64,000 bases of DNA from IMGVR_UViG_3300025141_000016:124001-188000; one strand, 5' to 3'; positions 37,101-63,879 are shown, counted from the first letter of the stretch. The notes: a model not told the origin generated them from the letters alone. Numbers and translations: made by a program.

Positions 37101-40100
37101 AGCCCGGAGAAACCACCGAGCAAAAGGTCAAGACACGCAAGACCGTCAATGGGGTCATCTGCAACCCAGCCCTGGGCGACATTCAGAACATCTCGGATGT
37201 GACTGCCGAGGACCGGCATCCCCGCGCTCGCGTGTGGGCTTACTATCCGTTGGGTAGTGCGGAGTTGGACGCGGCTTTGGGAACCACCACTGCAAGCCCT
37301 CCATCTGCGACATTCGTAGCCACGCCGGTTCCGTTGAGCGAGTTCCCGATCAACCCGGACACGGGGTTCCCTGACATTACGCAGTTGCTTTCGCAAGGTG
37401 GGGGCATTTCTGACTTGGAGTCAGGAGATGCAGCCCTGTCCACGCCAGCCTTTGTGGGGTCAACCACCGCTGGGGAGGCACCCCGAATCAACTTCGGAAA
37501 GCCGGACGGCACCATCTATTCCCTGACAGCGGACTCGGACCTCAACGGGGTCTATATCGGAGAGGTCCAGGCCGGTTGTGTTTTGGTGCTCGTTGATGTG
37601 ACGGGGGCACCGTTGGCTGGGTCCAGCGTCTTCGTCAATGAAACTATCCCCCTGGAAGACGTGATTTCCGCCGATGGTGGGTACGGAGACACGGTGTTCT
37701 GTGGTCCTACCAGCGGAACCCTGGACCCCACTTCCGTCCCGACACAGCCCACCCTGGATGAAACTGCTGAAGCTACCCAGGGGCTTCCCGACTACCGCAT
37801 CCAGTTCGACCTCAAAGTGGGCCGTCGGTCAGGCACCTTCATCGACGCATCGCTTCCCACCGCTGACGATGCGTTCCCGTTCCCTCTGCAAAAGTGGTTC
37901 GGCCAGAACCCTCCCTCTCCGCTGTCCTGCGTCGAGGGAGTGGTCGAGTTCGTCAACACGTCAACGCAGCCGCTCCAACTCCCGTGCCTGTTGGGCGAGG
38001 ACAAGGACGACAGCGGTGACTACCAGATCCCCTACATGCGGACCACGAACACCGAACTCGTGGTGCTCGGGGAAGTAGCTGCCTCACTGGTCCTGTTGTT
38101 CATCGACACGTCAGCAGCCCTGCCCCTCCCGGCAGGTGTTCCTGCCATCGAGCAGCAAGACCTTTCACTGGCGGTCTACCCCAACGAGATCGTCGTCAAC
38201 AACGGCACCATCGTCCAGGCCACCGACTATCCTGGCTATGCCCTCAACCCTGCCACTCTCTATGTGGGGGCTGCCGCCGCTGACGGTGACCTTCGCCCTG
38301 TGGAGACAGCGGGGGCCTACACCGCGAACTCGGGCATCGGAGACGTGCGGCGTTTCGACCTCATCTTGTCGCAAGCTGACCAAGCCCTCGTAGGGGCAGG
38401 AAGCATCCCGGCTGGAATGACCGGCATCTTGACCGTGGGCGACGTGGAGCAAACCGCTCCTTCAACTGACCCCAACCGTCCTTCGACGCTGGAAACCCCA
38501 CGGTTCGTGACCCCAACTGCCACAGGGATGGAACATAAGTACACCATCCGTGGGTTCGCAGCGAATGTGGCTGACGACACAGGGGACAACGGGTTCCACA
38601 TCACCGAAGTCTCGGGCGGTGGACAGCGGGATACCGTTTTCCACTTCGGGACGGTTCCCCTCATCCGACTCACAGAACTCGCAGCCCTCATCCCCGGCAC
38701 GCCTCCCGCCGCAGGTGTGGGAAACGCCCTGGTGATCCGCATCTATGACGCGGACCCCTCACTGGCTCCTGCGACGGACCCCTTCATCGGAGCCCTTGTC
38801 ATCCCCTGGGACGATCCGGGCGAGGTCATGTACGCCTGGAATGAGGCCGCAGCAGCGACAACAGCCATCACCACGGACCCTGCCGGGGTCGGGGTTGTAT
38901 TCACCGCCGACACTGTTTCTATCCAGTGTGTAGTGGCACAGCCGTCAATCATGGTTGCCTTGGGGCTCGTGGTTTCCACCCACTACGACTTCACGTTGGA
39001 CTTCGACACCTACTTCGACCCTGATACAGTGGCCTTCACGTCCGGGGTACTTGTCGGAGGTGCTGGTCTGGGCTCCTTGACCTGTGAGGTCGGGCGAGAT
39101 CGTCTGACCTTCAAAGAGGCGCTGGCCTTCAACCTCGCCAAGCCTCGGGGATACAGCCCCGCCAACGACCCAGGGAATACCAACCACGGACACGAACTCG
39201 GTGTCCAGATTGCCGTGCATGAGGTCACCTGCCAGGGTGTCCAGGGCTTCACGGTGAACTCCCCCGCTGCGATCAACGGAGCCCCGGCTCCGGGGGCGGC
39301 TGGGTTCGGAACCCACTACCTCACCTTGTTGGAGCGCATGGGTCCGAGTCCCGATGCAAGTGTCAGCGCCTTGGTGGAGTACACGGGCACCTGGGACGGC
39401 TCTGACGGCTCCCTCCGACTCATGGCATGGGAAGGGTACGAGAACACCCCCCTCGCCGCCGACGTGTCCACCATCAAGTTCGCCGGAGTCCCTTCATCCA
39501 ACGCCAATGAAACCGCCGAGATTGCGGCTGGGTTTGGAGTCATGGCAGACAAGGGCTTCATCGACACCACCATGGGGCTGGACCTCGATGGCAACCGCGA
39601 CTACATCTACGGGGCGGCTTTGTTCTTCCCCCTCGTACCGGACGTGGAGGCGGGAGACATTGTGGTGGTGGATGCCGGAACCACATCATCCGAAGCCGTC
39701 AAAGCTGGGACGTACCTTGTTCGTCATGCCGTGTCCTATGATGCAGGGGACGCATACGCGACCCCTGCTGCGAGCATCCCCTTCGTTCAGGCCCCGCTCC
39801 GTCCCGCTCGTCAATGGGACGATGCGACCGCTCCGGTCCCCAAGGCTGAAGCAAAGTTGGCGGGCACCCCTTCCGGGTCCGGGGGCTTTGACTGTGTGAA
39901 CGTGGACTTCCCCACCATCTTGGAAGTGGACTCCGTAACCAATGAGGTGACCCTACAGGGCGTAGTCCCCGTGCCTGGAACCCCGAACGGCCACGGATGG
40001 GCAGATCCGGCAACGGTGCCCAACAACCGCCATGTTCACTTGATTTTGGGGGATAAATACGCGGAATACGACAGTGCAACCTCCGCATGGCACATCAAGC

Positions 40101-42625
40101 AAGTCACTGTCCGTTTGGAGTACGACAGTCTGGGGGCCTACGACCCGGATGCTGGGACGTTGGTCCTCAACATGTCACCGGGAGCCACCCCATACTGGAC
40201 AGACAACCTCAACACCAAGGAAGGGCAGCCCACCACCGATGTTGACTGGTACACCTTGGCGGTTAGTGGCACTCGTGTCAGCGGGATCAACTACCTTCCC
40301 ATGCAACAGATGGGGACGCATCTCCCAGCCAATAATGTGGTTGGACCCAATGAGGTCGATGATGGATTCGGGCTCGGAATAAGCCTCATCGCAGGTTTCC
40401 GAAACGTGCTTGTGGGGAACCGGAACCCCGACATTATCGACGCATACATCAGTGATGTAGGCGATGATGTGTTCAAGGACTTCAACACCCCCATCACAGG
40501 CAATCTTCAGAACACCGTATTGGGGGCTGTTGACCCCAACAGTCTTGGGGTGGGGATCCCACTTCCCAAAGACAATACCGACTTCTACCCAGTACGCGGG
40601 GAGGCGGTGTACGGCAGGATCTACGACAACACGGGGGCGGGGACTCAACAGACTGAAATGTCCGGGGTAGCGACCTACTTGGACCTGTCCCAATGGGCCT
40701 CGCTGCTCGTGGACGATGCCTGGAGCCTCATTCACTTTGGCGACACAGACACTCACGGCATCGTATTCTACGACTCCACAAACACCCTCATGGGTACGAT
40801 CCCCCTCCCCCAGCCTCCCATCGTTCCGTGCCTGTTGCCGGGGGACCGGATCGTGTTCGGGGACGACATAGACCCGGCAACAGCGGCTCCTGGCTTCTTT
40901 GCCCTGGCAGGGATCTTCTTGGAGCCATCCTTCCCCCTTCCCACCGCGAACCTTCATTTGACGGCCCCTCGGGTGGTGGCGGCTTCTTACGGGGCACTCA
41001 CCACAGCCGACGTTGGAACACGAAACGTCCACGACTACACCCCCACTGGCTCCCCCAACTTGGACAATGAGGGGGTCCACTACTTCGTGCGGCGTGTCCG
41101 ACGATGGCACGATGCCCAGAATGAGATCATCTCGGGGTTGGATCCTTTGCGGTTCGCCTATGAGATCCGCCGTGGGGTCACCGCTTCCTACTCGACAGCA
41201 TCAACCTCACGGACCTTCGTGGCCGATCTGGCGACGTATGGAGCCGCCACCAACCTGGGAGCCTTCACCAACGAGGACGTGAACATCCACGCCGGGGACA
41301 TGCTTCGGGTCTTTGACTCCACCACGGGGCTTCTTCTCGACACGGCTGAAATCGAGTCCGTTGAGGGCACCGCCACTCTACGGTTGAAGCGTCCTGGCCT
41401 GACCGAAACCATCGTGGGCGGTGAGCCCTTTGAGATTTACCTGAACCAGCCCATCATCCCCCATGAGCAATCCAATGAGCAGTTGATGGACCTCGTGACG
41501 GACTCTGTTGTGTTCCGCCGCACCGTGGACTACGCCGCAGCGGAGACAGAGGGCGGCAAGGTCGTCGCCACGGGTGAACTGTCCGACACCACGACGGGAC
41601 CGGGTGCGATTACCACCTGGGCAGAGGAGGGGGTCGAGGAAGGTGACTATGTGATCATCGACCCAGCCGGTGTCCTCTACGAAGACACCGAGAGGGGAGG
41701 CAGACCTCTTGGCGATCAGAGCGTCACCGGACGCGCAATCCACATCGCAGGTGGCCCCACCAAGCTGGATGATAACCGAGGCTTCTACAAGGTCACGGCA
41801 GTCGATAAAGACTCGTCAGGGGCCAGCTTACCGGGAACTCTTGCCGTGGACGGCGAGTCTCGCTTCTCGGACGGGAGCATTTTCGGGGAAGACCCCACTA
41901 CGGAAGGGTACGTCGTGCTGCCCCTCATCACGCAATCTGACCTAACAGGCGGGGCCGAGGGCCAGCAAGACCTCCGACCCACCGCAGAGCCCGTCCCTGT
42001 AGGCGGCTCTTACTTGGACCGGGTTACCCCCGATGACTTCAAGAGCATCGAGCCTTTCGGGTACGAGATCATCCGGCCCAACAACATTTTCTCCGAGGAC
42101 GCACTGGAACTGGTGTTGTTCATGCGGGAGAGGATGTTCTCATGGATGGAGGAGATCGTGATTTCCCGCTCCCAGAGCGGCGACTACTTCGTCTTCCAGC
42201 GGGACGACCACATCATCGACGTGGGCTCCGCGACGGACCCCCTTGCGGGACTCGGGTTGATCTCCAACATCGTGGCAGAGAGCCTTGCGGGGCTCACCGC
42301 GACGACCCCGTTCGCCAACGTATCCGACTGTTTGAGTGTGCTTGACCGACGCTTCTGGATCCTCGACTTCCGTTTGGATGCCCTGGGCTACACCCAGTTC
42401 GTAGATGATACGTGGGGGCAACGTCCTGTCCTCCCCGACCTCATCGACGGGGTGTTGAACCTTGACGACCGCTTCCGCGACCAGCGGTACTCGTGGGTGT
42501 CCTTCCGTGCCAACCGAGAGGATGGCTCCATTCAAACCGCCCGCCGAGCCGAGAACCGCCTTCCTGGCCGCCTCCAGAAGCAGCGAGAAGCGTTGCTTCG
42601 GAAGAAAGCCTTGGATGAGTCGTAG
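31169..42625 (+). CDS. Giant 3818-aa virion structural protein (baseplate wedge/fibre-like)
   Basis: Uninterrupted 11.4-kb ORF with GTG start; acidic and G/T/P/V-rich, with repeated ..GxIxF-type beta modules; in the tail operon. Confidence 0.75.
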   Translation: MGFNLDGYVLRPARVASGNSPDTNEATTGVDRSQMDGAEMATLGYTVAPTGGRFTTAVEPYGDMYRAAVLQKPESREAEETYCVFAATTGSLSTVESEFLAQSASSDAVTVVPGTLAVEGGVWNDGTDTFLVLDPGGRDISSVSSLVIIKGPIVPGAPPTYVTITDGGSPGFLSQDPSIGKVVLDSTALDPAYLNGGFSKERGDQILLVTYILGGPTFWWTRNDQDVTRFGWDGKNQRWSPLQGSLPRDLGAVNGEDEFKLTPPLTRFAVGDMLPYDDTTTDSYALVRSGLYPDSISTPLTILVVTDEEAASGTWSGSWIDPATGTAADAVVGVYSGDLLLNPTYIEANAGRTLWYNPETFVVDADGDLGEVADFYPLALVPTSIGFPALSPVPGPTDRPFLRIGSRRYLTPYAVDTDADLPTPADFPAGNFYWSRMTGRIVLSKHDIDRCTPGASTTNPTPDFSDYDIFYLGARLYYDGVSLNTQPLPVKAPTPVFDEAGLPLDGDPETVPIFGKLYIPRAVPLPPPGISGVLWVPDGSGDTPSIDEKTIPLTRPNGCGMMREIEGIGDTFFFGESYAYEKTDVEEYDEDLPVLKFKVPKNTVAVSRLQDPDMTGSPLEEYSRLQMRRRLVKGEALYFLQAQITPSVYADEARIFSRFGEPFTLLGTETLTFNVDDFAGGYKWVATTLGAGEFSAAEVAADIQATSGVPAGSVGSLRGRIFIRDADLKIGKVEIGWDQSDATDLSGPAALGFLPGWRVSLPLPAAPAPNFCWLPDNGAAMGVFRSPVNMDRRDDTPDIRAKSQFDDLLLTDNITGMPFFSINQPPLEDMPGYDEGVHFRMAIGLLTVDLKNYHTTLGVGIKYDWVFDRLVWTEEGETSATQVAFPTSTLQLDHPAILPETVSALAMDDTAFGLRVKGPLDDSYATKIRGEDFLMPGGGQPGQALLVSVEGGVKASGGCGQFTAGTTTFEDPNVPDQDDLAAEVLVGYLLHVLTGEAEGVYQITKVTSGPPTVLNVFPAFPSSQTTAQWRVYEAKPRDEIDNTLVADVQQQVMNHLPSEPFKIRLLTSTGTVGGSLVAEVADAISSNRVISLRFGLGEGGNANEATPAYLVRGVKMGTVVATGLEIPDTSDLHFQTSLAGGTAYFSFRVGAAEFTSGVNLVMVAVAGTPAAGTVEIVAGSGEVVFADDVVSDLSGSTVFYDQQFLNPDDLTAGECEINASDGSINISTSDAGTYAGETAYFVEEMVTVNDLDVKTSPVSGSILFKKPLRAMQIVETNYFQADTNGDKATDTDGNYIEVTEFLPLIVKLEVATRIDDYTFSFNPTGRTYSEVVDPFMWVGVELQNFAGIETAFIEVDEDLGIYLIKLTSAVESTDEVKINYGVLEAFGGESAYTVSTPPVYRKPFFLLEGQTSFDLETDRSADFPVGHLLMLGPQPLYIKTVAYDITTDLTTVTITPDPLGELGSRAVGRDSGLTVSDFPVSVTLSPTDTEGFMPTLDTSTATGTPLLAVDRGQLEVVFYGDVRQYTKPNHLLEIEECPYIIINSSMSDDGRNTIVEIATPAYKAHDNSNTVRISMRPVYQPSPMEFAGIAPFVTSEEYNLFLMGATESGVGVPGKELIEGTHYTTDAATGEIIFQTPTQPPLNPGEWLHFRYTRQVVVNPLVKDDALLYPLYKGSYLYMTVPSVPNRLLGSVLRAKYTYRNPDSFYFSTLPMRNYLGDVAKVSAAKGGSAPSGGPVLAFPGESNMGSQGAMGLRGEAQDYRDQDRGGRVYVEFFNGVIVAFEQVLEAMDGRIIGDRDGKFLFFLGRDKRYPPPGYEDSISGELNPRLIWREVIENWSPSDYTDNDGWYMEADPVFDPTTAEIPDTGERPGAPDGITPDPHSLSFYTGRQRHRVKNDMDDRLLIGFGRPRGLAFLFPKFDVPGKFKDMWQDHEYSRLFPEKTTHFTRLFPGLEAVMGATGFTDPGYYSSGRKIEVPGPEPGETTEQKVKTRKTVNGVICNPALGDIQNISDVTAEDRHPRARVWAYYPLGSAELDAALGTTTASPPSATFVATPVPLSEFPINPDTGFPDITQLLSQGGGISDLESGDAALSTPAFVGSTTAGEAPRINFGKPDGTIYSLTADSDLNGVYIGEVQAGCVLVLVDVTGAPLAGSSVFVNETIPLEDVISADGGYGDTVFCGPTSGTLDPTSVPTQPTLDETAEATQGLPDYRIQFDLKVGRRSGTFIDASLPTADDAFPFPLQKWFGQNPPSPLSCVEGVVEFVNTSTQPLQLPCLLGEDKDDSGDYQIPYMRTTNTELVVLGEVAASLVLLFIDTSAALPLPAGVPAIEQQDLSLAVYPNEIVVNNGTIVQATDYPGYALNPATLYVGAAAADGDLRPVETAGAYTANSGIGDVRRFDLILSQADQALVGAGSIPAGMTGILTVGDVEQTAPSTDPNRPSTLETPRFVTPTATGMEHKYTIRGFAANVADDTGDNGFHITEVSGGGQRDTVFHFGTVPLIRLTELAALIPGTPPAAGVGNALVIRIYDADPSLAPATDPFIGALVIPWDDPGEVMYAWNEAAAATTAITTDPAGVGVVFTADTVSIQCVVAQPSIMVALGLVVSTHYDFTLDFDTYFDPDTVAFTSGVLVGGAGLGSLTCEVGRDRLTFKEALAFNLAKPRGYSPANDPGNTNHGHELGVQIAVHEVTCQGVQGFTVNSPAAINGAPAPGAAGFGTHYLTLLERMGPSPDASVSALVEYTGTWDGSDGSLRLMAWEGYENTPLAADVSTIKFAGVPSSNANETAEIAAGFGVMADKGFIDTTMGLDLDGNRDYIYGAALFFPLVPDVEAGDIVVVDAGTTSSEAVKAGTYLVRHAVSYDAGDAYATPAASIPFVQAPLRPARQWDDATAPVPKAEAKLAGTPSGSGGFDCVNVDFPTILEVDSVTNEVTLQGVVPVPGTPNGHGWADPATVPNNRHVHLILGDKYAEYDSATSAWHIKQVTVRLEYDSLGAYDPDAGTLVLNMSPGATPYWTDNLNTKEGQPTTDVDWYTLAVSGTRVSGINYLPMQQMGTHLPANNVVGPNEVDDGFGLGISLIAGFRNVLVGNRNPDIIDAYISDVGDDVFKDFNTPITGNLQNTVLGAVDPNSLGVGIPLPKDNTDFYPVRGEAVYGRIYDNTGAGTQQTEMSGVATYLDLSQWASLLVDDAWSLIHFGDTDTHGIVFYDSTNTLMGTIPLPQPPIVPCLLPGDRIVFGDDIDPATAAPGFFALAGIFLEPSFPLPTANLHLTAPRVVAASYGALTTADVGTRNVHDYTPTGSPNLDNEGVHYFVRRVRRWHDAQNEIISGLDPLRFAYEIRRGVTASYSTASTSRTFVADLATYGAATNLGAFTNEDVNIHAGDMLRVFDSTTGLLLDTAEIESVEGTATLRLKRPGLTETIVGGEPFEIYLNQPIIPHEQSNEQLMDLVTDSVVFRRTVDYAAAETEGGKVVATGELSDTTTGPGAITTWAEEGVEEGDYVIIDPAGVLYEDTERGGRPLGDQSVTGRAIHIAGGPTKLDDNRGFYKVTAVDKDSSGASLPGTLAVDGESRFSDGSIFGEDPTTEGYVVLPLITQSDLTGGAEGQQDLRPTAEPVPVGGSYLDRVTPDDFKSIEPFGYEIIRPNNIFSEDALELVLFMRERMFSWMEEIVISRSQSGDYFVFQRDDHIIDVGSATDPLAGLGLISNIVAESLAGLTATTPFANVSDCLSVLDRRFWILDFRLDALGYTQFVDDTWGQRPVLPDLIDGVLNLDDRFRDQRYSWVSFRANREDGSIQTARRAENRLPGRLQKQREALLRKKALDES

Positions 42626-46286: not shown

Positions 46287-48839
46287 GTGTCTGGGAAACG
46301 TCGCCAACCATCGCCCTCGCGGGTAGCCAAGAAGTGGAAGAAACTCCCGAAGGGGTGGACAGAGGAGTCCGTCGAGAAGTTCTGGGACACGCTGACGGGG
46401 GGCACCCCGGAGCACAAGGTCTGGGACTGCATCGACAAGATGACCAAGCCCTTCGGAGATGGTGCGGGTGCTTTCTGTGGTGGGCTGGCCGACTGGCAGA
46501 TGCCTGGATGGAGACAGAAGAACAAGAAAGAGTCTCCTGACGCTCGCTCCGATGCCAAGTCCTACTGGAAGGGCAAGATCAAAAAAAGGGCCAGCGCAGA
46601 GCGCGTGGCCGAGGAATGGTTTTCTGGAGCCCGAATGGCAAGCGCATCCGCACCCGTATTGAAGTTCCTCCAACGACTTCGGGGGAAGGGCAAGGGGGCT
46701 CTGAACATCAATGTGTTGGAAGAAGCCCTCCCGCTTCTGGGCTGGTCAATCACCAAGACCACAGCACCCCTCCGCATCGCTGATCCTGACTCGGTGAAGC
46801 CCCTACTGGAAGCCATGCTGAACCCCTCTTTCATCTGGGGGTACAGTGGGACCAAAGAGCCCAAGCGCGTTGACTTTGATAGCGTGGAGGAGGCCGAAGC
46901 AGGGCTGCGGAAATGGCAGAGGGAAGCCCAGAAAGGGAAGCCTCCCCGTCACCCCACCTTCAAGAAGTTCTACTACACCCAGGCTCTCTACCCGGTGGAG
47001 GAGAGAGCGGGCGGCTCCCGATTCAAGACGGGCTACTTCTTCGACATTATGGGCCTGTGGCTCGGGGTGGAAGCCTATGAGGTCACGAACCCCTCGGGAG
47101 CCTCGGTCCTCTTGCCCCTCAAACCTGACTACCGGGGTCGGTTCAAGGTCGATCTCCTACGCTGGAAGATGGCCACGTTCTGGACCTGGGCCTACAAGAA
47201 CGGCATCCAAGACGACGCAGCCGCATACCTCGATACCATCGGGGCCGAGGAAGTGGCGCGGGTCACAGCACCCGCCAGCGCCCGGTCCCTCGACGGCACT
47301 GGGACGTGCCCCGCGTGCTTCAATAATGTGAAGCTGCGGCGGGGCGAGAGAATCATGCGGCATGGCTGGCAGGTACAGGGTCAACGCCAATGGGGTTCCT
47401 ACGGGAACACATGGCACACCGGTCCCTGTTTCGGCACGGGCTACGTTGCTTTTGAGTTGAGCCCCGACGGGACCAAGGACTACCGGGACCAAGTTGTGAT
47501 CCCCTACAAGGGCAGCGTGGAGAACGAACTGGCCCGCGTGAAGCGGGGGGCCGACCCCATCACAGTGGATAAGGGTCGTCGTTGGGAGAGGACACTCCAA
47601 CCCGGCGACCCCGAGTATTCCCGGTATCAAGACATATCTATCAAGCAGGGGACCAAAGCTGTCTCCGACCTTGAGCAAGACATTCGGACCCTGGACTCTC
47701 GGATCACGGGCTGGAAGGAAGCACCTCTGCCTGGAGCGCGGATGGCGAGTTCCGTCCGGGTGGCTCTCCGGTTCGCCGTGAGGAAGGCACCTCCCATGCA
47801 GATGGGGTCAGCCACCATGCTCAAAAAGCAGGGGCTTACCCCTGTGGATGTGTTTTTCGGTGAGGCACGACCCCACAACAGGCCGACCCTGCAACTACTG
47901 GATTCTGTGCAAGACCGGAAGGGGGACGTGTACTTCTTTGTGGGGGTGGCCCCAGACGGGAGTGCCATCCTCGCTGAAACCGAAGGTGAGGCGAAGCGCA
48001 AGCACCGCAAGATCATCGAGGATCGGAAACACTACGAGTCGCGGATGGCTGACGGAAGTCCGCTCATGCTCCAACCCGACTACGGCACATCGAACGCTGC
48101 CCTCCCCCGTGAAGGAGCACGAACCAAGGGAAAGAGTCTGCCCGAGACGGGGTACACCCTCTCCGTAGCTTCCATCTATCGTGCCGTTCCCGCTGGGGTC
48201 ACCACCATCGAGCCGATGGACTATGTGACCCGCACCAAGAAATGGGCGCAGGGCCATGCTGACCATGTGGCTGCGGTGGAGGAAGACGAAGCAGTCGTCC
48301 TCAAAGCCATGGTCAAGGCAGCAGACGTGTATGAAGCCTCCAACCCCGGTGAATACTTCTACGATGGGCCTGCCGTGCGGGGCCGCGTTGTCTACCGGCA
48401 ACGGTATGCGTCGGTCCACAAGACCGCTCGGGACTTCCAGTTGACCGAGTTGGAGATCACCCCTGGCCAGGAACCCGCCTCCCCCGACATTGACTTCGCG
48501 ACGGTGATCACCGCCGAGTTCCTGTTGGACGGGAAGCCTCTGGCAAAGGTGCTCGGGGTCCAGCAACGGACCCTGGAACGGCACCTCGCCAAGCACTCGT
48601 CACGGAAGCTGCTTCACGCCCTTTTCGATTCCAAGGAAGGCGAGCGCATCCTGACGGCTCTCCAGCCCAAGATCAAAGCCATCCTGGCTGACCACGGCGC
48701 GGAACAGGGGCAAGGTCATCCCCACCATCTCTCTATCGAGTGGGACGCAGGGAGCAGCATCAACTCGGCTGCGGCTCGTCCGGGCCGTGGGGTCCACTAC
48801 ACGGTGGAGATCGACGCGCATGGAGAGTGGTCAGAATAA
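46287..48839 (+). CDS. Multidomain protein with RVAx[RKE][FW]-type linkers and a Cys/His zinc-binding-like module
   Basis: SRVAKKW, KRASAERVAEEW, RMASSVRVALRF linkers; GTCPAC..HG..HTGPCFG module; GTG start behind GAGGA. Confidence 0.8.
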   Translation: MSGKRRQPSPSRVAKKWKKLPKGWTEESVEKFWDTLTGGTPEHKVWDCIDKMTKPFGDGAGAFCGGLADWQMPGWRQKNKKESPDARSDAKSYWKGKIKKRASAERVAEEWFSGARMASASAPVLKFLQRLRGKGKGALNINVLEEALPLLGWSITKTTAPLRIADPDSVKPLLEAMLNPSFIWGYSGTKEPKRVDFDSVEEAEAGLRKWQREAQKGKPPRHPTFKKFYYTQALYPVEERAGGSRFKTGYFFDIMGLWLGVEAYEVTNPSGASVLLPLKPDYRGRFKVDLLRWKMATFWTWAYKNGIQDDAAAYLDTIGAEEVARVTAPASARSLDGTGTCPACFNNVKLRRGERIMRHGWQVQGQRQWGSYGNTWHTGPCFGTGYVAFELSPDGTKDYRDQVVIPYKGSVENELARVKRGADPITVDKGRRWERTLQPGDPEYSRYQDISIKQGTKAVSDLEQDIRTLDSRITGWKEAPLPGARMASSVRVALRFAVRKAPPMQMGSATMLKKQGLTPVDVFFGEARPHNRPTLQLLDSVQDRKGDVYFFVGVAPDGSAILAETEGEAKRKHRKIIEDRKHYESRMADGSPLMLQPDYGTSNAALPREGARTKGKSLPETGYTLSVASIYRAVPAGVTTIEPMDYVTRTKKWAQGHADHVAAVEEDEAVVLKAMVKAADVYEASNPGEYFYDGPAVRGRVVYRQRYASVHKTARDFQLTELEITPGQEPASPDIDFATVITAEFLLDGKPLAKVLGVQQRTLERHLAKHSSRKLLHALFDSKEGERILTALQPKIKAILADHGAEQGQGHPHHLSIEWDAGSSINSAAARPGRGVHYTVEIDAHGEWSE

Positions 48840-58419: not shown

Positions 58420-59412
58420 TTATTTCTTCTTCTTACCGGAGCCGAAGGTCACGCGACCCCCCACTTCAATGACGCGATCCTTTGGCTTGGCCGGAGCCCA
58501 TGGGTCAGTCTCCTCGGCAACAGGGGGAGGGGCCTCCCCTCCGACCATGATCCCCCCTTGGGGAACAGAGGTGTTCATCCTCGTGGGGACGGGTTGAACC
58601 GGGGCAGCCACAGGGGGCGGGGAAGGATCATTGGCGGGCTCCACTACCTCGCGGGGTGCGTTCGCGATCCGAAAGGCGAGATCGCGAGCGTGCTTGCATG
58701 GGTTCTCCCGTGACGGGCACCCACATTCCCACCGCTCATCGGCATGGAGCACCACCTCGTAGATGGGGTGCTTGCCATCCTTCCCCACGGAGTCTCCCCG
58801 AACCTTCCATTTCCCCTCGATCTGGGGCTGTGTCGATTCCGACACTTCCGATTCTCGGCGTTCAACCTCCGCTTTCGGGGAGGGATAAGATTTCTTATCC
58901 TCGGGTAAGATTTCTTGTGCTGCCGAAGAGTCGGACTTGTCCGACTGTGGGGTCACTGTTGTAGGGGGCGTGGGGTCATTAGTGGGGTCAGCCTGGGGCT
59001 CGGGATCAGGCTCGTCAACTGGAGGGGATTCCGCCTGAAATGCAGCGGGGGGAGTCACCACTCCCATCATCTCCGCAGCCGCTCGGCCTACCTCGGCATC
59101 GGTGACGGGTTCCCAGTCTCCCTTCCTGTCTGAAATCTCCAACGCGATAGCGTGGCGCATCATGTCTCGGAAGTCGGGAAGGCCCATGTCCTCGGCAGTC
59201 CCCGGAGGGGCGAACTGCGGATTGTGGAGTAGGCGGTCTTCCTGGGTCAGCATCCGTTGGCTCCACTTCGATCCCCCTCCCCGACTGTTGCTACAGCCTG
59301 GGTTCAGACAGACGTTGCAGAACATCTGCTTGAACTGCTCGGGGGCCAACAGCTTCCGGTGCTCACCGTCGTAGCAACCGTCCCATAGGTCGGGGAGGGT
59401 CTTCTTGGCCAT
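58420..59412 (-). CDS. SWIM zinc-finger protein with Cys-rich N terminus and Pro-rich linker
   Basis: WECGCPSRENPCKH (CxC-x6-CxH); TGATG overlap with thymidine kinase. Confidence 0.7.
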   Translation of the reverse strand: MAKKTLPDLWDGCYDGEHRKLLAPEQFKQMFCNVCLNPGCSNSRGGGSKWSQRMLTQEDRLLHNPQFAPPGTAEDMGLPDFRDMMRHAIALEISDRKGDWEPVTDAEVGRAAAEMMGVVTPPAAFQAESPPVDEPDPEPQADPTNDPTPPTTVTPQSDKSDSSAAQEILPEDKKSYPSPKAEVERRESEVSESTQPQIEGKWKVRGDSVGKDGKHPIYEVVLHADERWECGCPSRENPCKHARDLAFRIANAPREVVEPANDPSPPPVAAPVQPVPTRMNTSVPQGGIMVGGEAPPPVAEETDPWAPAKPKDRVIEVGGRVTFGSGKKKK

Positions 59413-60026
59413 CAGCCTCTCCTCCCCCTCGCCCAACAGAGACGGCAACGGGCCTCATAGACTCCCGCTGCCCCAACCTGTACCAGTTCCCCCGTCGAGC
59501 GTTCGGGGATCCTGTACGAGCGCGTGGCTGGGTTCCCGCACACGGGACGGTCATACTTATCGACCACAGCCACGCACACGGCGGTCAGTTTGGTCACCTT
59601 GTCAGCACGAGCGAGGAGTTCGGCCATCGGCCCAAAGGGCTCGCCATTGGAATCGAGATCGAGCCCCGCCACAATGACCCTACGCCCTCGGTTGGCTTGG
59701 TCCTCCAACACCTCTACGACCTCGGGGTCCATGAACTGCACCTCGTCTACGCCCACTACCTCACCCGTGAGCGAGAAAGGATGGATAGCCAACGCCGCTT
59801 TGAGTTCAGCCACGGTAGAGACAGGGATCGCCCGAAAGGACTCGGAAGGTGTTTCCACACCGCTCACCACGACAGGGTGCGTGGCGATGCCCTCGGTCAC
59901 ATAGCGGTCATCCAGCGAAGGCTTGAACGCTTGGACATGCTGACCCGCGATCACACATCGTCGGAGCCGACGGATCAGTTCCTCGGACTTCCCCGAATAC
60001 ATGCAACCAGCAATCACTTCCAACAT
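59412..60026 (-). CDS. tdk: Thymidine kinase (type II, Zn-binding lasso)
   Basis: GCMYSGKSEEL P-loop, VDEVQF, VAGLDLD..PFG, KLTAVC..C..ATRS..YEARCRLC. Confidence 0.93.
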   Translation of the reverse strand: MLEVIAGCMYSGKSEELIRRLRRCVIAGQHVQAFKPSLDDRYVTEGIATHPVVVSGVETPSESFRAIPVSTVAELKAALAIHPFSLTGEVVGVDEVQFMDPEVVEVLEDQANRGRRVIVAGLDLDSNGEPFGPMAELLARADKVTKLTAVCVAVVDKYDRPVCGNPATRSYRIPERSTGELVQVGAAGVYEARCRLCWARGRRG

Positions 60027-60388
60027 CACCCACCCACCTGCTTGTAGAAACGACTCGTGCCGCTCTGTTCATCCAACACACCCACAGGACAACGGGGGAC
60101 GCACCCCCGTCGGCACCCTGGAAGGTGCTGGAGGATGAGATTCCCCGGCCACCTGCCTTGCTTCTGGCCTTTGGTCTGGTGGGTGGTGAACCCACCCTCA
60201 TACTTGCCGTACACCTTGTCATCGGCGGTGGCGGCTCCGGCTCCCTGTGTATGGGTCGTCAGCACTTCACCTGTCCGACAGGCGATCCGAGAAGCATCAA
60301 TGTTCAGCCCCCCACACCCATGCCGGAGGGTGTTGGCCGCGACAGTGCCCTCGGACAAGGGCTTCCGTAGGACGTGGACAACCCTCAT
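60026..60388 (-). CDS. Stand-alone DNA methyltransferase variable-region module B
   Basis: VLRKPLSEGTVAANTLRHGCGGLNIDASRI..GRWPGNL..CPVGVLDEQSGTSRFYK; matches the internal segment of phage beta-class N4/N6 MTases; paralog of 61480-61836. Confidence 0.75.
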   Translation of the reverse strand: MRVVHVLRKPLSEGTVAANTLRHGCGGLNIDASRIACRTGEVLTTHTQGAGAATADDKVYGKYEGGFTTHQTKGQKQGRWPGNLILQHLPGCRRGCVPRCPVGVLDEQSGTSRFYKQVGG

Positions 60389-60981
60389 TGGCCGAGTCCT
60401 GGCTTCTCCAGAAACCAGAGACGGTCAGGGTTCGTGTAGGTGTGGGTGAGTTCCTCCCCAGCATCAATGTTCCGCTTGGCATAGAAGTCCACAAACCGAC
60501 GATTGGTGTCAGGGTCAATGTAGGGTTCGTGCCGGAGGTTGGAGTGCATGGACCGTTCGTGGTTGTAGAGCATCCCGTAGCCCAGCAGGAGAACCCGATA
60601 CTTCTTCGTTGTGTCCTCTGCTTCGTCCACGATCCAAGGGAACAACATGTGCCCAAGCCTGATGTTGTCTTTTGAATCCGAATACGGAGCCATCGCCAGA
60701 GCGAGTAAGTGGGGGTTGACTTCCACGACGAACGCGGGGCAGCGTTCTACGAGTGACTTCTCGGGGATAAGGAGCGAAGTTACCACCCCCATCCCGCGAC
60801 CAGAAATATGTCGCAGTTGAAGGTGGCTGTTCTGCCCCAGCGGGATGAAGTCTCGTCTCTGACGATCACCCATGTCCTTCCCGCAGAAGCGACAGTTAGG
60901 AAGCGCATCCGAAAAAGAACTGATCTGACGGTATTCGTTGAGCATCCCACAGTGGGGGCATACAGCTTGCTTTATGTCCAT
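60385..60981 (-). CDS. Zinc-ribbon plus SET-domain protein (putative protein lysine methyltransferase)
   Basis: CPHC..CRFC; GRGMGV..VERCP..LGYGMLYNH..FYAKRNIDAGEELTHTY. Confidence 0.85.
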   Translation of the reverse strand: MDIKQAVCPHCGMLNEYRQISSFSDALPNCRFCGKDMGDRQRRDFIPLGQNSHLQLRHISGRGMGVVTSLLIPEKSLVERCPAFVVEVNPHLLALAMAPYSDSKDNIRLGHMLFPWIVDEAEDTTKKYRVLLLGYGMLYNHERSMHSNLRHEPYIDPDTNRRFVDFYAKRNIDAGEELTHTYTNPDRLWFLEKPGLGQ

Positions 60982-60988
60982 TTCTGCA

Positions 60989-61483
60989 TCACCCCAAGTT
61001 GAATCCGTCGCCACGCACAACGATCACATGGCGGCCTTCCCGCCATGCTGACAATACCCGCAGGAAAGTCTCGGCTACCCCTCTCGGGGTGCCCTCCGAG
61101 AGAGGGGGTTCGTAACATTCGGGGGGGCCTTCCTTCCGCCGATACCCCCTCCCGCTGAATCCCCCCGGTCGGCAGAGGGGGGCCTTCCACCCAATGCAGT
61201 TGCCTTTGAGAGCACACTCCCCTTCCTCGGCACTGACCCGACGCGCACTCGCTCGGGGATCACGCCCGAGTTCCTGTACCAACGGATGAAGCCGCCCATG
61301 TAGGGCATGAGACAACGCCTCGGCGGGGATCTCCTTGATCCCGCCTTCCCATGACGTGCCCCGCACCGACTCCAGCGCCCCCCAGTGGTCCGACTCCTCG
61401 GGGACGAACTCGATGAGCAGCAGCACCTTTTCGGCCTTGTGGTCCGGCAACGGGTCCGGGTCGGTGAGGTCAATGAACCTCAC
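60989..61483 (-). CDS. Hypothetical Cys-containing protein
   Basis: GTGA overlap with module A stop. Confidence 0.65.
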   Translation of the reverse strand: MRFIDLTDPDPLPDHKAEKVLLLIEFVPEESDHWGALESVRGTSWEGGIKEIPAEALSHALHGRLHPLVQELGRDPRASARRVSAEEGECALKGNCIGWKAPLCRPGGFSGRGYRRKEGPPECYEPPLSEGTPRGVAETFLRVLSAWREGRHVIVVRGDGFNLG

Positions 61484-61836
61484 TTGCCACCCCCAACCTG
61501 CTTGAAGAACCGCGATTCACCCAGTGCAGCAACAGGGCACCCTCCAGCGCAAACACCCTCACAGCCATCGAGGTGTTGAAGGATGAGGTTCCCCGGCCAC
61601 CGCCCTGTGGGTTGCTGGAAACTCCCAGCGTTGCCTTGCTCCCCCCGCTTGTACCGCCAGTTCTCGGCACCATCCCAACGCTCCGTGGGGTTCTCCGCGT
61701 AGGCCCCCCCGTTGAGGTTGTCATCGGTCGAGATACGAGAAACGCCAATGTTCAAGCCTCCCGTACCGTGCTTCACGGTGTTGGCGGCAACCGTCTTCTC
61801 GGACAGGGGTTTCCGTAGGACGTGGATTACCTTCAT
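61480..61836 (-). CDS. Stand-alone DNA methyltransferase variable-region module A
   Basis: ATGA overlap with the catalytic half; VLRKPLSEKTVAANTVKHGTGGLNI..GRWPGNL..CPVAALGESRFFK. Confidence 0.75.
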   Translation of the reverse strand: MKVIHVLRKPLSEKTVAANTVKHGTGGLNIGVSRISTDDNLNGGAYAENPTERWDGAENWRYKRGEQGNAGSFQQPTGRWPGNLILQHLDGCEGVCAGGCPVAALGESRFFKQVGGGK

Positions 61837-62696
61837 GCGGGCTTCCGGCCAACGACAACAGGCTCCCAACTCGGTTTCAAGGCGGTTCCCCACGAAGTCC
61901 ACTGACGGGCTTCGGGTGTATGAGGCAGCGTCACCGGCATCTCGCTCGGCCCATCACTGCTGAAGGCCACACCGGGGACGACTTTCTTGAAACCGATGAC
62001 CTCGCGCTCGGCTTCGGCAAAGAACCCGTCGAGTTCTGCCTCCCTGTCGGTGCCTTCAACCCCCAACACCTGCTTCATCACCTGCCACTTGGCTTGTGAG
62101 GGCAGCACGTTGAACCACGGATCGGGCTGCTTTCCCGGCTCCGGGTACGACAGGTAGTTGCAGGCACGGAACCCACACTCCCGATCAATGGCCTTGCGGC
62201 TCTTGCCCGAAGCATCGAACAGGGCGCGTAGTTCCTTTTTCAAGACCACGATAGAGACATGGATCCGGCCCTGGTGCTTATCGAGAGCCTTTCCTATGGA
62301 CATGGATTTCGGGAACCCGCTTCCGTAGGTCCATGCTTCCAGGCGCAGGTCCACGAGGCCAACCTCGGCCATCGCCGCTGTCATACGGTGAAACGTGCGA
62401 GTCCCACTGAACGCCTTGACCACCCCTCCGGGGCGAAGGACACGGTAAATCTCATCCCACAGCGTCAGGGAAAACGCGATGCCAGTACCATCCCAAGTCT
62501 TGCCCATGAACCCCCGACGATCCGTGCCCACACGAGCGCGTCCATACGGGTTGTCCACGAACTGACGGGAAGACCCCCCACGGCTCACCGAGGTCAGGTC
62601 ATAGGGGGGGTCGCAGACCACAGCCCCAACTGACCCTTCCTCATATTCTCGGAGCACCTTCACGCAATCTCCGTATCGTAAAGTCAACGTCTGCAT
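61833..62696 (-). CDS. DNA N4/N6 methyltransferase N-terminal (catalytic, DPPY) half with HTH-like insert
   Basis: GDCVKVL..VVCDPPY..FMGKTWD..YRVLRPGG..WTYGSGFPKS..GTALKPSWEP..RKP; no FxGxG motif. Confidence 0.85.
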   Translation of the reverse strand: MQTLTLRYGDCVKVLREYEEGSVGAVVCDPPYDLTSVSRGGSSRQFVDNPYGRARVGTDRRGFMGKTWDGTGIAFSLTLWDEIYRVLRPGGVVKAFSGTRTFHRMTAAMAEVGLVDLRLEAWTYGSGFPKSMSIGKALDKHQGRIHVSIVVLKKELRALFDASGKSRKAIDRECGFRACNYLSYPEPGKQPDPWFNVLPSQAKWQVMKQVLGVEGTDREAELDGFFAEAEREVIGFKKVVPGVAFSSDGPSEMPVTLPHTPEARQWTSWGTALKPSWEPVVVGRKPA

Positions 62697-62706
62697 CCCA
62701 CCCCCC

Positions 62707-63522
62707 TCAAAAGCCAAACAGATCGTCAAGAGTCAACGTCACGGGTTTCCCCTCCTGGGCTTTCTTGATGGTGTCCAGATCCGACGTGACCTTCGCAGCG
62801 TTCCACCCAGCTTCACGGGTGTTCCAATGACGAACGCGGCCTTCCGCGATGGTGAGGTATTCCTCCCCCATCTCGATACCGATGAACTCATGCCCCGTTC
62901 GGAGACAAGCGATACCTGTCGTCCCTGACCCCATGAAGGGGTCGGCCACCACAGCATCCTGGGGCACGTCTGCCAACAGCCTCTCCATGATCCCGATGGG
63001 CTTCACGGTCGGGTGGATGTTCCGGCGTTTCTGGACTCGGTTCAGGCCGATGCCTTGGGCCGCTTCGTAGTCCTCACCATCAGAGATGGCCCCTTGTGCT
63101 CCCCCTGACATGCCGAACACCTGCTCGGGGAGATGGTCGAGCCCTTCCTCTCGCTCGGAACGGCTGGCCTTGGCGACGTAATGAAGGTGGTCCCCATCAC
63201 CGGGCTGGTCGGGGACCATGATGCAATCACGGACCTCAAAGCCTCCGTCCTCGGCGTAGCAAGCCCCCGTGTGTCCCGTGGGCTCGTCGTCGGGTGCCGC
63301 CAACATCAGGTGACCCCCTGGTTTCAGGACGCGGTGCGCTTCCTTGATCGCCTGGAGGTCATCGAGAGGGCTCTCCAACACGATGCCGTGGACGCTCTCA
63401 TCCTCATGCCCGGACCAGTCATAGCCAGGAGTTGCATGGATGAAGACCCCATCGATCCCCTCTGGGTCGCCAGGGGTGATCATCGTCCGCAAGTAGTCCA
63501 CCAGTTCAAAGTGCAGGCTCAT
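62707..63522 (-). CDS. DNA N4/N6 methyltransferase C-terminal (SAM-binding) part with degenerate catalytic motif
   Basis: YVAKASRSER..HPTVKP..DPFMGSGTTG..FIGIE..YLTIAEGRV; VLESPL sits where DPPY is expected; ATGA overlap. Confidence 0.85.
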   Translation of the reverse strand: MSLHFELVDYLRTMITPGDPEGIDGVFIHATPGYDWSGHEDESVHGIVLESPLDDLQAIKEAHRVLKPGGHLMLAAPDDEPTGHTGACYAEDGGFEVRDCIMVPDQPGDGDHLHYVAKASRSEREEGLDHLPEQVFGMSGGAQGAISDGEDYEAAQGIGLNRVQKRRNIHPTVKPIGIMERLLADVPQDAVVADPFMGSGTTGIACLRTGHEFIGIEMGEEYLTIAEGRVRHWNTREAGWNAAKVTSDLDTIKKAQEGKPVTLTLDDLFGF

Positions 63523-63845
63523 GCGCCCCCCTTGGGCTTCAAGAGTTCTTTCAGCACATCCATGACGGGTTCTCCCCACGCTTCTTCCGTCATCACCGCT
63601 CGGGTCACCGAGGGCGAAGCGTAGGGGCACGCGGGGCACCCCAAGTAGGTACAGATGCCCTTGCCTCCACGGAGTTGGGGCATCTCGGCATCCACAACCA
63701 CGGAACACAAGTGGCCCCCACAGTTGGGACACGGAGGGGTGTCTGCTGGAGCACGCTCCCAAGTAGGGGTGCCTGTGGGTTCGGGGTCAGGGAGTCCGTA
63801 ATCGCGCAGGCTCATGGCTTGTTCCGAGGTCAGAGGGTGTGCCAT
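63519..63845 (-). CDS. Small zinc-finger protein
   Basis: CPNC..C..C..CPAC. Confidence 0.65.
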   Translation of the reverse strand: MAHPLTSEQAMSLRDYGLPDPEPTGTPTWERAPADTPPCPNCGGHLCSVVVDAEMPQLRGGKGICTYLGCPACPYASPSVTRAVMTEEAWGEPVMDVLKELLKPKGGA

Positions 63846-63879
63846 CTGTACCCGAGAGGGAGGGAGCCACAACCCCCCA

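What the first reader, a model, noticed from the sequence alone, without database searches (positions are those of the whole stretch)
60026..63522. DNA amino-methyltransferase split into complementary polypeptides, with two alternative variable-region modules
Seen: gene 61833-62696 has motif IV (DPPY, 62601-62612) but no SAM-binding motif and stops at ..EPVVVGRKPA. Gene 62707-63522 has HPTVKP and DPFMGSGTTG, but its DPPY position is degenerate (VLESPL) and it jumps straight to YVAKASRSER. Two small paralogous genes (61480-61836, 60026-60388) begin V.HVLRKPL and end SRF[FY]KQV. Established: in intact beta-class phage MTases the order is DPPY..EP..ARKPL-[variable/TRD region: TVAAN..GLNID..GRWPAN..SRFF]-Y.AKAS..HPTVKP..FxGxG. 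The small genes therefore fill exactly the segment missing between the two halves. The gene order is permuted (C, N, middle), the junction motif RKP is duplicated rather than broken, and the genes are joined by start/stop overlaps or a clean RBS, which argues against decay. Inference: a heteromeric MTase with swappable specificity or regulatory subunits. Split C5 MTases (M.AquI, M.EcoHK31I) and active/inactive pairs (METTL3/14) are known; I know of no three-part version with two alternative modules.
Basis: partly seen in the sequence, partly recalled or inferred. Interest (0 to 1): 0.9.

Follow-up and report, generated by a model that had tools for sequence, protein, structure and literature searches.

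The report
Three-piece phage DNA methyltransferase with hub subunit
A giant phage encodes a DNA methyltransferase as separate, conserved proteins (a catalytic piece, a cofactor-binding hub and two small recognition modules); related uncultured phages carry the same kit, so it looks like a natural mix-and-match enzyme, not a broken gene.

Summary
On the minus strand of a tightly coupled operon lie P1 (62707-63522), P2 (61833-62696), module A (61480-61836) and module B (60026-60388).

P2 is the N half of a beta-class amino-methyltransferase: it has DPPY and YGSGFPKS and stops at ...RKPA. The modules match the middle "target-recognition" segment of intact phage enzymes.

P1 is more than a C half. 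It carries the SAM-binding part (HPTVKP, DPFMGSGTT) behind a second, catalytically dead N-type half, here called N'.

All pieces are under purifying selection (dN/dS 0.09-0.36). The arrangement recurs in every one of about 17 related uncultured-phage loci examined. The P1 family has at least 212 clusters at 50% identity.

Natural fusions link the parts: module-P1 (dozens), P1-P2, and P2-module-P1. One contig has 1 P1, 6 P2 paralogues and 6 modules.

An AlphaFold model of a natural full fusion matches compact solved beta-class enzymes at TM 0.6-0.74 across its whole length. A module-N'-C model without the N half does not (TM 0.2-0.33).

Best reading: P1 is a hub. Its C half completes P2 into the active site, and its dead half carries a module. 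Decay is excluded. Whether the two modules act alternately or together is untested. I found no published description.

The parts
62707..63522 (-). P1, the hub subunit (271 aa). It consists of a dead N-type half (N', residues ~1-112), a variable linker, and a SAM-binding C half.
   Evidence: PF01555 E 2.5e-21, profile positions 35-220. The family alignment has invariant ED.GFE.RD, HY..K...ER, N.HPT.K and PF.GSG. dN/dS is 0.14-0.17.
63364..63375 (-). The position in P1 equivalent to motif IV (ESPL); it is not conserved.
   Evidence: It aligns to DPPY of Quico gp82. In 43 family members this loop reads ESP, ESS, EAS, VGD, RGT and so on. None of the 120 closest relatives has a conserved (D/N/S)PP(Y/F/W).
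62998..63015 (-). The HPTVKP motif of P1, in the region before motif I.
   Evidence: Invariant H, P, T and K. In the relatives L011 and L015 an intein sits exactly between HP and TVKP.
62917..62943 (-). Motif I (DPFMGSGTT), the SAM-binding loop of P1.
   Evidence: Invariant P, F, G, S, G. It matches CcrM, DpnA and RsrI motif I in the intact relatives.
62710..62730 (-). The conserved C-terminal tail of P1 (LDDLFGF).
   Evidence: Conserved across the P1 family after an invariant SD. Its function is unknown.
61833..62696 (-). P2, the catalytic N half (287 aa). It carries LRYGDC, DPPY, VLRPGG and YGSGFPKS, a ~120-aa insertion, and its last strand EPVVVGRKPA. It has no SAM-binding motifs.
   Evidence: tblastn to intact phage methylases covers residues 1-286, E 1e-42. 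phrog_67 E 7e-22. Every one of about 20 P2 homologues seen has DPPY, and each full-length one ends at (R/K)KP or a close variant (GIKQ, GVKG, RRA). dN/dS is 0.10-0.31.
62601..62612 (-). Motif IV (DPPY) of P2.
62304..62327 (-). YGSGFPKS of P2, the motif VIII-like loop after strand beta6.
   Evidence: It aligns to W..(N)PMP of CcrM and DpnA in the intact relatives. An intein interrupts this motif in a P2 paralogue of L093.
61480..61836 (-). Module A (118 aa). Its features are an RKPL strand, TVAAN, GGLNI, GRWPGN, a C-x3-C-x3-C cluster and SRFF.
   Evidence: It aligns to the middle (TRD position) of intact enzymes. There are 224 stand-alone homologues of 82-207 aa. It is 82% identical to the L003 module, with dN/dS 0.09.
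60026..60388 (-). Module B (120 aa), a paralogue of module A.
   Evidence: 48% identical to module A. Its nearest relative is the module fused to P1 in L008. dN/dS is 0.21 against the L005 module.
60989..61483 (-). A 164-aa protein of unknown function inside the operon. Membership of the system is uncertain.
   Evidence: No Pfam, PHROG, NCBIfam or meaningful PDB hit. Homologues lie near the methyltransferase pieces in L003, L005, L008, L011, L092, L093 and L094. dN/dS is 0.12-0.21.
60385..61020 (-). A zinc-ribbon plus SET-domain protein inside the operon. Its link to the system is by synteny only.
   Evidence: PF00856 E 5e-5. It is syntenic in L003, L005, L008 and L011 only.
59412..60029 (-). 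Thymidine kinase, the last gene of the coupled block.
   Evidence: PF00265 E 2e-37. A TK gene also sits next to the pieces in L003, L008, L011, L092 and L173.

Best explanation
The locus encodes a multi-polypeptide DNA amino-methyltransferase of the beta class (PF01555), most likely an N6-adenine enzyme. It presumably protects the phage genome from host restriction.

P2 supplies the substrate-side half of the Rossmann-like fold. This half holds all the catalytic and base-binding loops (GDC, DPPY, YGSGFPKS) and its own last strand.

P1 is a hub made of two half-domains joined by a variable linker:
- Its C half (HPTVKP, motif I, motif II) binds SAM and packs against P2 to build the one active site.
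- Its N' half is a duplicated N-type half that has lost every catalytic motif. It serves as a platform for a small module.

The module starts with a copy of the RKP strand, inferred to slot into the N' sheet. It carries the variable, Cys-rich target-recognition region.

The assembly would be a built-in pseudo-dimer, matching the rule that in beta-class enzymes the recognition domain of one protomer serves the active site of the other.

Two modules (A, B) give two recognition units on one catalytic core. They most likely act as alternatives with different target sequences.

Shown: homology, motif content, conservation, selection, co-occurrence and natural fusions.
Inferred: which half packs with which (from AlphaFold plus Foldseek only), strand complementation, DNA as the substrate, adenine as the target, and alternation of the modules.
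For: 1. Complementary motif content. P2 has DPPY, YGSGFPKS and GDC but no motif I. P1 has HPTVKP and FxGxG but a non-conserved loop where DPPY should be.

2. Purifying selection on every piece, at saturated synonymous divergence.

3. Inteins sit in HP|TVKP of P1 and in YG|SGFPKS of a P2 paralogue in relatives. Inteins typically occupy functionally critical sites (established knowledge; see also PMC9957025).

4. A P2-type gene lies beside every P1-type gene examined: window, L003/4, L005, L008, L011, L015, L042-44, L090, L092, L093, L094, L096, L173, L174, L175 and the P0238 contig.

5. Natural fusions:
- module-P1: about half of the 120 closest P1 relatives.
- P1-P2: P0291.
- P2-module-P1: L093:9107-10798, P0254, P0315.

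6. Structure models:
- The AlphaFold2 model of the natural full fusion has pLDDT 83.6 and pTM 0.84.
- Compact solved beta-class enzymes of ~200-280 aa (M1.HpyAVI, MboIIA, RsrI, BceJIV, PvuII) align across 520-570 columns of it with target-normalised TM 0.6-0.74. CcrM (331-350 aa) gives 0.53-0.56.
- Small viral enzymes give TM up to 0.75.
- So the first ~170 and the last ~100 residues form one canonical domain.
- The model of module-N'-C without an N half reaches only TM 0.2-0.33 and rmsd 17-22 A against the same targets.

7. Beta-class enzymes work as dimers with division of labour (PMC7544214).

8. L094 has 1 P1, 6 P2 paralogues and 6 modules in one array, as expected for one shared hub.
Against: - No biochemical data exist, and no multimer prediction could be run.
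The N+C pairing is read indirectly from Foldseek alignment spans and TM-scores.
- The alignment given to AlphaFold mixed intact enzymes (which carry N-C couplings) with split ones, and this could bias the model.
- Proteins with two or three tandem modules on one P1 (P0266, P0271, P0283, P0302, P0337) do not fit a simple picture of one module strand completing N'.
- L003 manages with one module.
- P1's short HYV segment could itself be the missing strand of N'.
- The substrate (DNA, adenine versus cytosine-N4) is inferred from family membership only.
Confidence: 0.6

Rival explanations
1. Module plus P1 is the complete folded unit, with N' and C forming the Rossmann-like domain. P2 is a separate second 'protomer' that lends its DPPY loop, or only helps bind DNA. 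This would resemble an inactive/active pair such as METTL14/METTL3.
For: P1 aligns end to end with small complete beta-class enzymes. Module-P1 fusions are the commonest architecture. The module-N'-C model has high local confidence, with 241 residues at pLDDT >= 90.
Against: N' has lost the GD, DPPY and motif VIII loops, and its motif IV loop is not conserved. P2 alone has no SAM site, so no subunit would be active. The N'+C model does not superpose on any solved beta-class domain (TM 0.2-0.33), whereas N+C of the full fusion does.
Confidence: 0.15
2. The two modules are not alternatives. They act together in one complex, for example to read a bipartite or longer site or both DNA strands.
For: Two or three modules are fused in tandem to one P1 in P0266, P0271, P0283, P0302 and P0337. 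Several relatives have one fused plus one free module: L015, L042, L092, L096.
Against: L003/L004 and L173 have a single module. Module numbers vary from 1 to 6 among relatives. By analogy, and from my own knowledge, multispecific Bacillus-phage C5 methylases carry tandem recognition domains that work independently.
Confidence: 0.3
3. The pieces are remnants of a methylase gene broken by rearrangement and insertion of mobile genes, and they are no longer functional.
For: The gene order is scrambled relative to intact enzymes. Unrelated genes (164-aa ORF, SET, TK) lie between pieces.
Against: dN/dS is 0.09-0.36 at dS 0.6-1.9 for every piece. The break point is identical in relatives 46-89% identical. 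All catalytic and SAM motifs are intact. Translational coupling is preserved. The P1 family has at least 212 clusters at 50% identity.
Confidence: 0.02
4. The pieces are joined into one polypeptide during decoding (frameshift at the ATGA overlap, bypass) or by DNA rearrangement (a shufflon that swaps modules).
For: P2 and module A overlap by ATGA. A natural chain with P2's end followed by a module start exists (L093). A bypass-like signal exists in the P2 genes of three relatives.
Against: P1 precedes P2, and other genes separate the pieces here and in L003 (TK between P2 and the module). There is no slippery site at the overlap (read). There are no long inverted repeats. The modules are in direct orientation, with only 74-86% identical short stretches.
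Confidence: 0.03
5. The complex is a methyltransferase or SAM-binding machine for a substrate other than phage DNA (RNA, a nucleotide pool, a protein), or it is a decoy against host defence.
For: Some beta-class relatives act on RNA or ssDNA (PMC7544214). The operon also holds a SET-domain protein and a thymidine kinase.
Against: The closest intact relatives are phage orphan DNA methylases. The module corresponds to their DNA-recognition region. The best structural matches are DNA methyltransferases bound to DNA.
Confidence: 0.1

Closest known systems
Intact orphan beta-class DNA methylases of actinophages and other phages (PF01555; e.g. Mycobacterium phage Quico gp82, Gompeii16 gp58; the family studied in PMC9957025)
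   Same: The same motifs in the same relative order: DPPY ... YGSGFPKS ... EP.VV.RKPL - TVAAN/GLNID/GRWP.N/SRFF - Y.AKA..ER - HPTVKP - FxGSGTT. Identity is 33-37% over P2 and 35-45% over the modules. Inteins and variable insertions occur at conserved sites in both.
   Different: Those are single chains of 400-600 aa with one N half. Here the enzyme is spread over three or four polypeptides, the RKP strand is duplicated, and an extra dead N-type half (N') is attached to the C half.
Split cytosine-C5 methyltransferases M.AquI and M.EcoHK31I
   Same: One methyltransferase fold is assembled from two polypeptides encoded by neighbouring or overlapping genes.
   Different: They use different chemistry and belong to a different family (C5, PC motif). 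They have two pieces, not three or more. They have no pseudo-half-domain hub and no multiple recognition modules.
Beta-class dimers with division of labour: M.EcoP15I Mod2, CcrM, METTL3-METTL14, ciliate MTA1-MTA9-p1-p2 (PMC7544214, PMC9852454)
   Same: One unit recognises and another catalyses. One partner has an eroded motif IV (METTL14 EPPL; here ESPL in P1). MTA1c also has separate DNA-binding subunits.
   Different: In those complexes each methyltransferase subunit has a complete fold, and the active one has both the SAM and catalytic motifs. Here the SAM motif and the catalytic motif lie on different polypeptides.
Multispecific C5 methyltransferases of Bacillus phages (SPR, phi3T, rho11s) and Type I HsdS specificity subunits (my own knowledge)
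   Same: Several recognition domains serve one catalytic core, giving a phage or host several methylation specificities.
   Different: In the Bacillus-phage enzymes the recognition domains are in one chain of a C5 enzyme. HsdS belongs to gamma-class Type I systems. Here the modules are free small proteins (or N-terminal fusions) of a beta-class enzyme.

Membership tests
Beta-class amino-methyltransferase (PF01555 N6_N4_Mtase) | Significant match to the family profile above the gathering score | tested here: met
   P1 scores 77.1 bits against a cut-off of 26.7. P2 alone scores 15.5 bits, below the cut-off, but aligns over residues 1-286 to family members at E 1e-42.
Beta-class amino-methyltransferase (PF01555 N6_N4_Mtase) | Catalytic motif IV (D/N/S)PP(Y/F/W) | tested here: met
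   DPPY in P2 (62601-62612) and in all P2 homologues seen. Absent from P1.
Beta-class amino-methyltransferase (PF01555 N6_N4_Mtase) | SAM-binding motif I FxGxG, preceded by HPT.KP | tested here: met
   Present and invariant in P1. Absent from P2 and the modules.
Beta-class amino-methyltransferase (PF01555 N6_N4_Mtase) | Motif order IV - TRD - I on one polypeptide | tested here: not met
   The motifs lie on three separate ORFs in the order I, IV, TRD. The single-chain order is kept only in rare relatives (L093, P0254, P0315), and there with an extra N' half.
Beta-class amino-methyltransferase (PF01555 N6_N4_Mtase) | Methyl transfer to N6-adenine or N4-cytosine in DNA | not testable with these tools
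   This needs expression and methylome reading.
Naturally split methyltransferases (M.AquI / M.EcoHK31I type) | Activity requires two or more polypeptides that complete one fold | tested here: inconclusive
   Supported indirectly by the complementary motifs, the natural fusions and the AlphaFold/Foldseek comparison. No assay or multimer model was available.
Active/inactive paralogue pairs (METTL3-METTL14, MTA1-MTA9) | Two complete methyltransferase folds, one with live SAM and catalytic motifs and one degenerate | tested here: not met
   P2 lacks the whole SAM-binding half. P1 has a live SAM motif but a dead catalytic loop.
Multispecific methyltransferases (several recognition domains per core) | More than one recognition domain associated with one catalytic core | tested here: met
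   The window has two paralogous modules. Relatives have 1-6 free modules or up to 3 fused ones. Distinct specificities were not tested.

The most novel reading that the evidence does not exclude
Large uncultured phages carry a plug-and-play DNA methylation kit. One SAM-binding hub protein (P1) can be completed by any of several catalytic half-proteins (P2 paralogues). It can also be armed with any of several small recognition modules. A single operon would then write many different methylation patterns: two in this window, and up to 6 x 6 combinations in the L094 relative. This would be the first natural amino-methyltransferase whose SAM pocket, catalytic loop and recognition domain are all on different exchangeable polypeptides.
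Probability: 0.4. Interest if true: 0.85.

Novelty: new variant of a known kind. Interest (0 to 1): 0.72.

Why it matters
Methyltransferases are normally treated as single folded units. Here the SAM site, the catalytic loop and the recognition domain appear to sit on separate, evolutionarily stable proteins. If that holds, three things follow.

- It gives a natural test of how a Rossmann-like fold can be assembled from parts, and of the long-standing idea that methyltransferase classes arose through duplication and permutation of half-domains.
- It suggests how phages can multiply their anti-restriction specificities cheaply.
- It offers a ready-made modular scaffold for engineering targeted DNA methylation.

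There is also a practical annotation point. P1-like proteins are annotated as ordinary 'DNA methylases'. P2-like and module proteins are annotated as fragments or hypothetical proteins. As a result the methylation capacity of many uncultured phages is misread.

Tried and rejected
1. P1 as an active enzyme through the alternative TPGY at residues 31-34. Rejected: neither TPGY nor ESPL is conserved in the family.

2. Invertible or shufflon-type switching of modules. Rejected: the modules are in direct orientation, and only short, weak inverted repeats are present.

3. Further copies of the pieces elsewhere in the window. None were found.

4. PDB sequence search with module A. Only spurious hits to designed repeat proteins. 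The unknown 164-aa protein likewise gave only a spurious hit to a designed protein.

5. Pfam, PHROG and NCBIfam searches for the modules and the 164-aa ORF. Nothing came up beyond phrog_3008.

6. Profile-driven locus search with the P1 alignment. The patterns chosen were shared with ordinary methylases, so only 3 of 80 loci were informative.

They were removed and the job was rerun.

8. Model coordinates are not exposed. Strand-by-strand contacts, such as whether the module's first strand pairs in the N' sheet, could therefore not be read.

9. Cultured-phage hits that looked like 'module + C' pieces (Klebsiella phage Kpn BU9, Pseudomonas phage PP9W2) turned out to be intact single-chain enzymes.

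10. The huge-phage record LR756508.1 has four tandem single-chain methylase genes (three intact, one degenerate), not the split kit.

11. Literature searches for a described split beta-class or phage adenine methyltransferase found nothing.

Full report
**What is in the window**

The stretch 59412-63872 is one densely packed minus-strand block. In transcript order it contains:
- a 117-aa ORF;
- P1 (62707-63522, 271 aa);
- P2 (61833-62696, 287 aa);
- module A (61480-61836, 118 aa);
- an unknown 164-aa ORF (60989-61483);
- a zinc-ribbon/SET-domain protein (60385-61020);
- module B (60026-60388, 120 aa);
- thymidine kinase (59412-60029);
- further genes downstream.

The P1 stop and the P2 start are separated by a 10-nt G-rich spacer. 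P2/module A, module A/164-aa ORF, SET/module B and module B/TK overlap by 4 nt. The window comes from a 297-kb IMG/VR viral contig, IMGVR_UViG_3300025141_000016. G+C is about 60%. Most of its large proteins have no PHROG match.

**What the pieces are**

P2 aligns over residues 1-286 with the N-terminal part of intact mycobacteriophage methylases at about 36% identity and E 1e-42. A six-way alignment with Quico gp82 and Gompeii16 gp58 shows three things:
- P2 stops exactly after the strand EP.VV.RKP.
- Both modules cover the following segment (RKPL, TVAAN, G.LNID, GRWP.N, SRFF).
- The SAM-binding end (HPTVKP, FxGSGTT) is matched by the last ~110 residues of P1.

P1 is more than that, however. 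Its residues 41-101 align to Quico residues 27-100, the N half. P1 also aligns end to end with small complete beta-class enzymes of haloviruses and Faecalibacterium phage Mushu. Pfam covers profile positions 35-220 of 221. So P1 is a second N-type half (N') followed by the C half.

In an alignment of 43 P1-type proteins, the loop that should be DPPY is unconserved (ESP, ESS, EAS, VGD, RGT and others). The family-wide N-terminal GD motif is also absent. By contrast, ED.GFE.RD, HY..K...ER, N.HPT.K and PF.GSG are invariant. None of the 120 closest relatives has a conserved (D/N/S)PP(Y/F/W). P2, on the other hand, keeps GDC, DPPY and YGSGFPKS in all of the roughly 20 homologues seen.

**Not decay**

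Orthologous sets exist in L005 (a 286-kb contig) and L003/L004. Amino-acid identity to the window is 57-85% for the methyltransferase pieces. dN/dS is 0.09-0.36 for P1, P2, both modules and the 164-aa ORF, at dS 0.6-1.9. The break after RKP is the same in relatives only 46% identical. Inteins interrupt HP|TVKP of P1 in L011 and L015, and YG|SGFPKS of a P2 paralogue in L093. Inteins are known to sit at conserved sites in this methylase family (PMC9957025).

**A family, not a one-off**

- Module A has 224 stand-alone homologues of 82-207 aa.
- P1 has 212 cluster representatives at E <= 1e-30 in a library clustered at 50% identity.
- About half of the closest P1 relatives carry a module fused to their N-terminus. 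Some carry two or three tandem modules.
- Every P1-type locus inspected also has a P2-type gene close by, often with overlapping stop and start: L003/4, L005, L008, L011, L015, L042-44, L090, L092, L093, L094, L096, L173, L174, L175 and the contig of P0238.
- L173 has the three pieces in colinear order: P2, module, P1.
- L094 has one P1 followed by six P2 paralogues and six modules.
- Most other relatives of P2 in viral contigs and in cultured phages are ordinary single-chain enzymes.

I found no paper describing the split arrangement.

**Natural fusions**

Besides module-P1, there is a P1-P2 fusion, P0291 (N'-C followed by a DPPY half). There are also full P2-module-P1 chains: L093:9107-10798, P0254 at 83% identity, and P0315 at 34%. 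In the full chains the end of the P2 part (...EPIIVCRKQ) is followed a few residues later by the module start (...IYIGRKPL). The 'duplicated junction' is therefore a regular feature of the family and not a scar.

**Which half packs with which**

Two AlphaFold2 models were made.
- Model 1: the L008 module-N'-C protein, with pLDDT 78 and pTM 0.73.
- Model 2: the natural full fusion of L093, with pLDDT 83.6 and pTM 0.84.

Foldseek against the PDB gave the same targets in both cases: CcrM, M.BceJIV, M1.HpyAVI, RsrI, MboIIA and PvuII.

For model 2, the compact targets of about 200-280 residues align across 520-570 columns, nearly the whole 564-residue query. Their target-normalised TM is 0.6-0.74. 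CcrM (331-350 residues) gives 0.53-0.56. Small viral enzymes reach TM 0.75. A ~200-residue domain can span the whole query at that TM only if the N-terminal half and the C-terminal half of the query form one canonical domain, with the module and N' looped out.

For model 1, which has no N half, N'+C reach only TM 0.2-0.33 with rmsd 17-22 A.

This is indirect. It does agree with the motif logic: the half that kept all the SAM-facing and base-facing loops is P2, not N'.

**Mechanism proposed**

P1 is a hub. Its C half plus P2 make the catalytic domain, with SAM from P1 and DPPY from P2. Its N' half carries a module. The module's first strand is a copy of the last strand of the N half, and I infer that it completes the N' sheet.

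This gives a pseudo-dimer. It fits the rule that in beta-class enzymes the recognition domain of one protomer faces the active site of the other (PMC7544214).

Modules A and B are 48% identical. They share the conserved ends and a C-x3-C-x3-C cluster, and they differ in the middle. In a tree, A groups with the modules of L003, L011 and L005-B, while B groups with the module fused to P1 in L008. They are therefore old paralogues. Alternative use, giving two specificities, is my preferred reading. Joint use is a live rival because of the tandem-module fusions.

No inversion system is present.

**Comparison and novelty**

The parts belong to PF01555. The closest intact relatives are the actinophage orphan methylases of PMC9957025. 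Split C5 enzymes, METTL3/14, MTA1c, EcoP15I Mod2 and multispecific phage C5 enzymes each share one principle with this system. None has the SAM motif, the catalytic motif and the recognition domain on separate polypeptides with a half-domain hub.

I rate it a new variant of a known kind, of high interest if activity is confirmed.

Noticed in passing
L008 ~8095-8116; L054 ~8095-8120; L090 ~8785-8810: In three relatives the P2 gene is interrupted right after DPPYG by 8-12 nt that begin with a stop codon and end in GGC (GGC TGA AT GGC CTT; GGC TGA ATAT GGC CTT; GGA TAG TACCAC GGC CTT). Reading then resumes LEFMGK.WD exactly as in uninterrupted homologues. This looks like a short take-off/landing translational bypass (compare T4 gene 60). 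The alternative is a further split that leaves a DPPY peptide of roughly 35-40 aa. The window's P2 is not interrupted.
   Followed up: partly
L094 9563-18701: One P1-type gene is followed by six P2 paralogues and six modules in a single array on a 125-kb viral contig. The P2 paralogues differ mainly in the loops after DPPY (some Cys-rich) and before the last strand.
   Followed up: partly
L011 6164-7999; L015 10001-12559; L093 6172-8082: Inteins are inserted in HP|TVKP of P1-type proteins and in YG|SGFPKS of a P2-type protein. Several database relatives carry Hint and LAGLIDADG domains.
   Followed up: partly
window 62710-62730 (and 62779-62790): The P1 family ends in a conserved tail: an invariant SD, then an acidic stretch, then LDDLFG(L/F). 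This resembles bacterial sliding-clamp-binding motifs (QL[SD]LF) and could instead be the contact for P2. Not tested.
   Followed up: no
window 60989-61483: An unknown 164-aa protein lies inside the operon. Homologues lie near the methyltransferase pieces in seven related loci down to 26% identity. No family or structure match was found. It may be a further component.
   Followed up: partly
window 60385-61020: A zinc-ribbon plus SET-domain (protein lysine methyltransferase-like) gene sits between the two modules. It is syntenic only in the closer relatives.
   Followed up: no
window 61899-62276 (P2 residues ~141-266): P2 carries a ~120-aa insertion between YGSGFPKS and the last strand. The insertion is shared with mycobacteriophage methylases and with L008. 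It is absent from L003, and it is replaced by a different insertion (..AEREVVG.KRGVGGEN..) in L005, L015, L093 and P0315, with a related but shorter form (..AEREVVGTKRG..) in L173. This fits the within-gene recombination reported for the intact family.
   Followed up: partly
L174 12635-13858: A P2-type half is fused to an Eco29kI-like (GIY-YIG) endonuclease domain, next to a module-P1 fusion gene.
   Followed up: no
L176 (LR756508.1 283436-288763): A 484-kb uncultured 'huge phage' carries four tandem single-chain methylase paralogues. One has an intein in the YG|SGFPK motif, and one has degenerate catalytic and SAM motifs. It is the unsplit counterpart of the L094 array.
   Followed up: partly
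window 31169-42625; 830-3847; 46287-48839: There is a 3818-aa ORF, and several proteins of about 800-1340 aa have no PHROG match. Two large proteins contain a ParB C-terminal domain.
   Followed up: no
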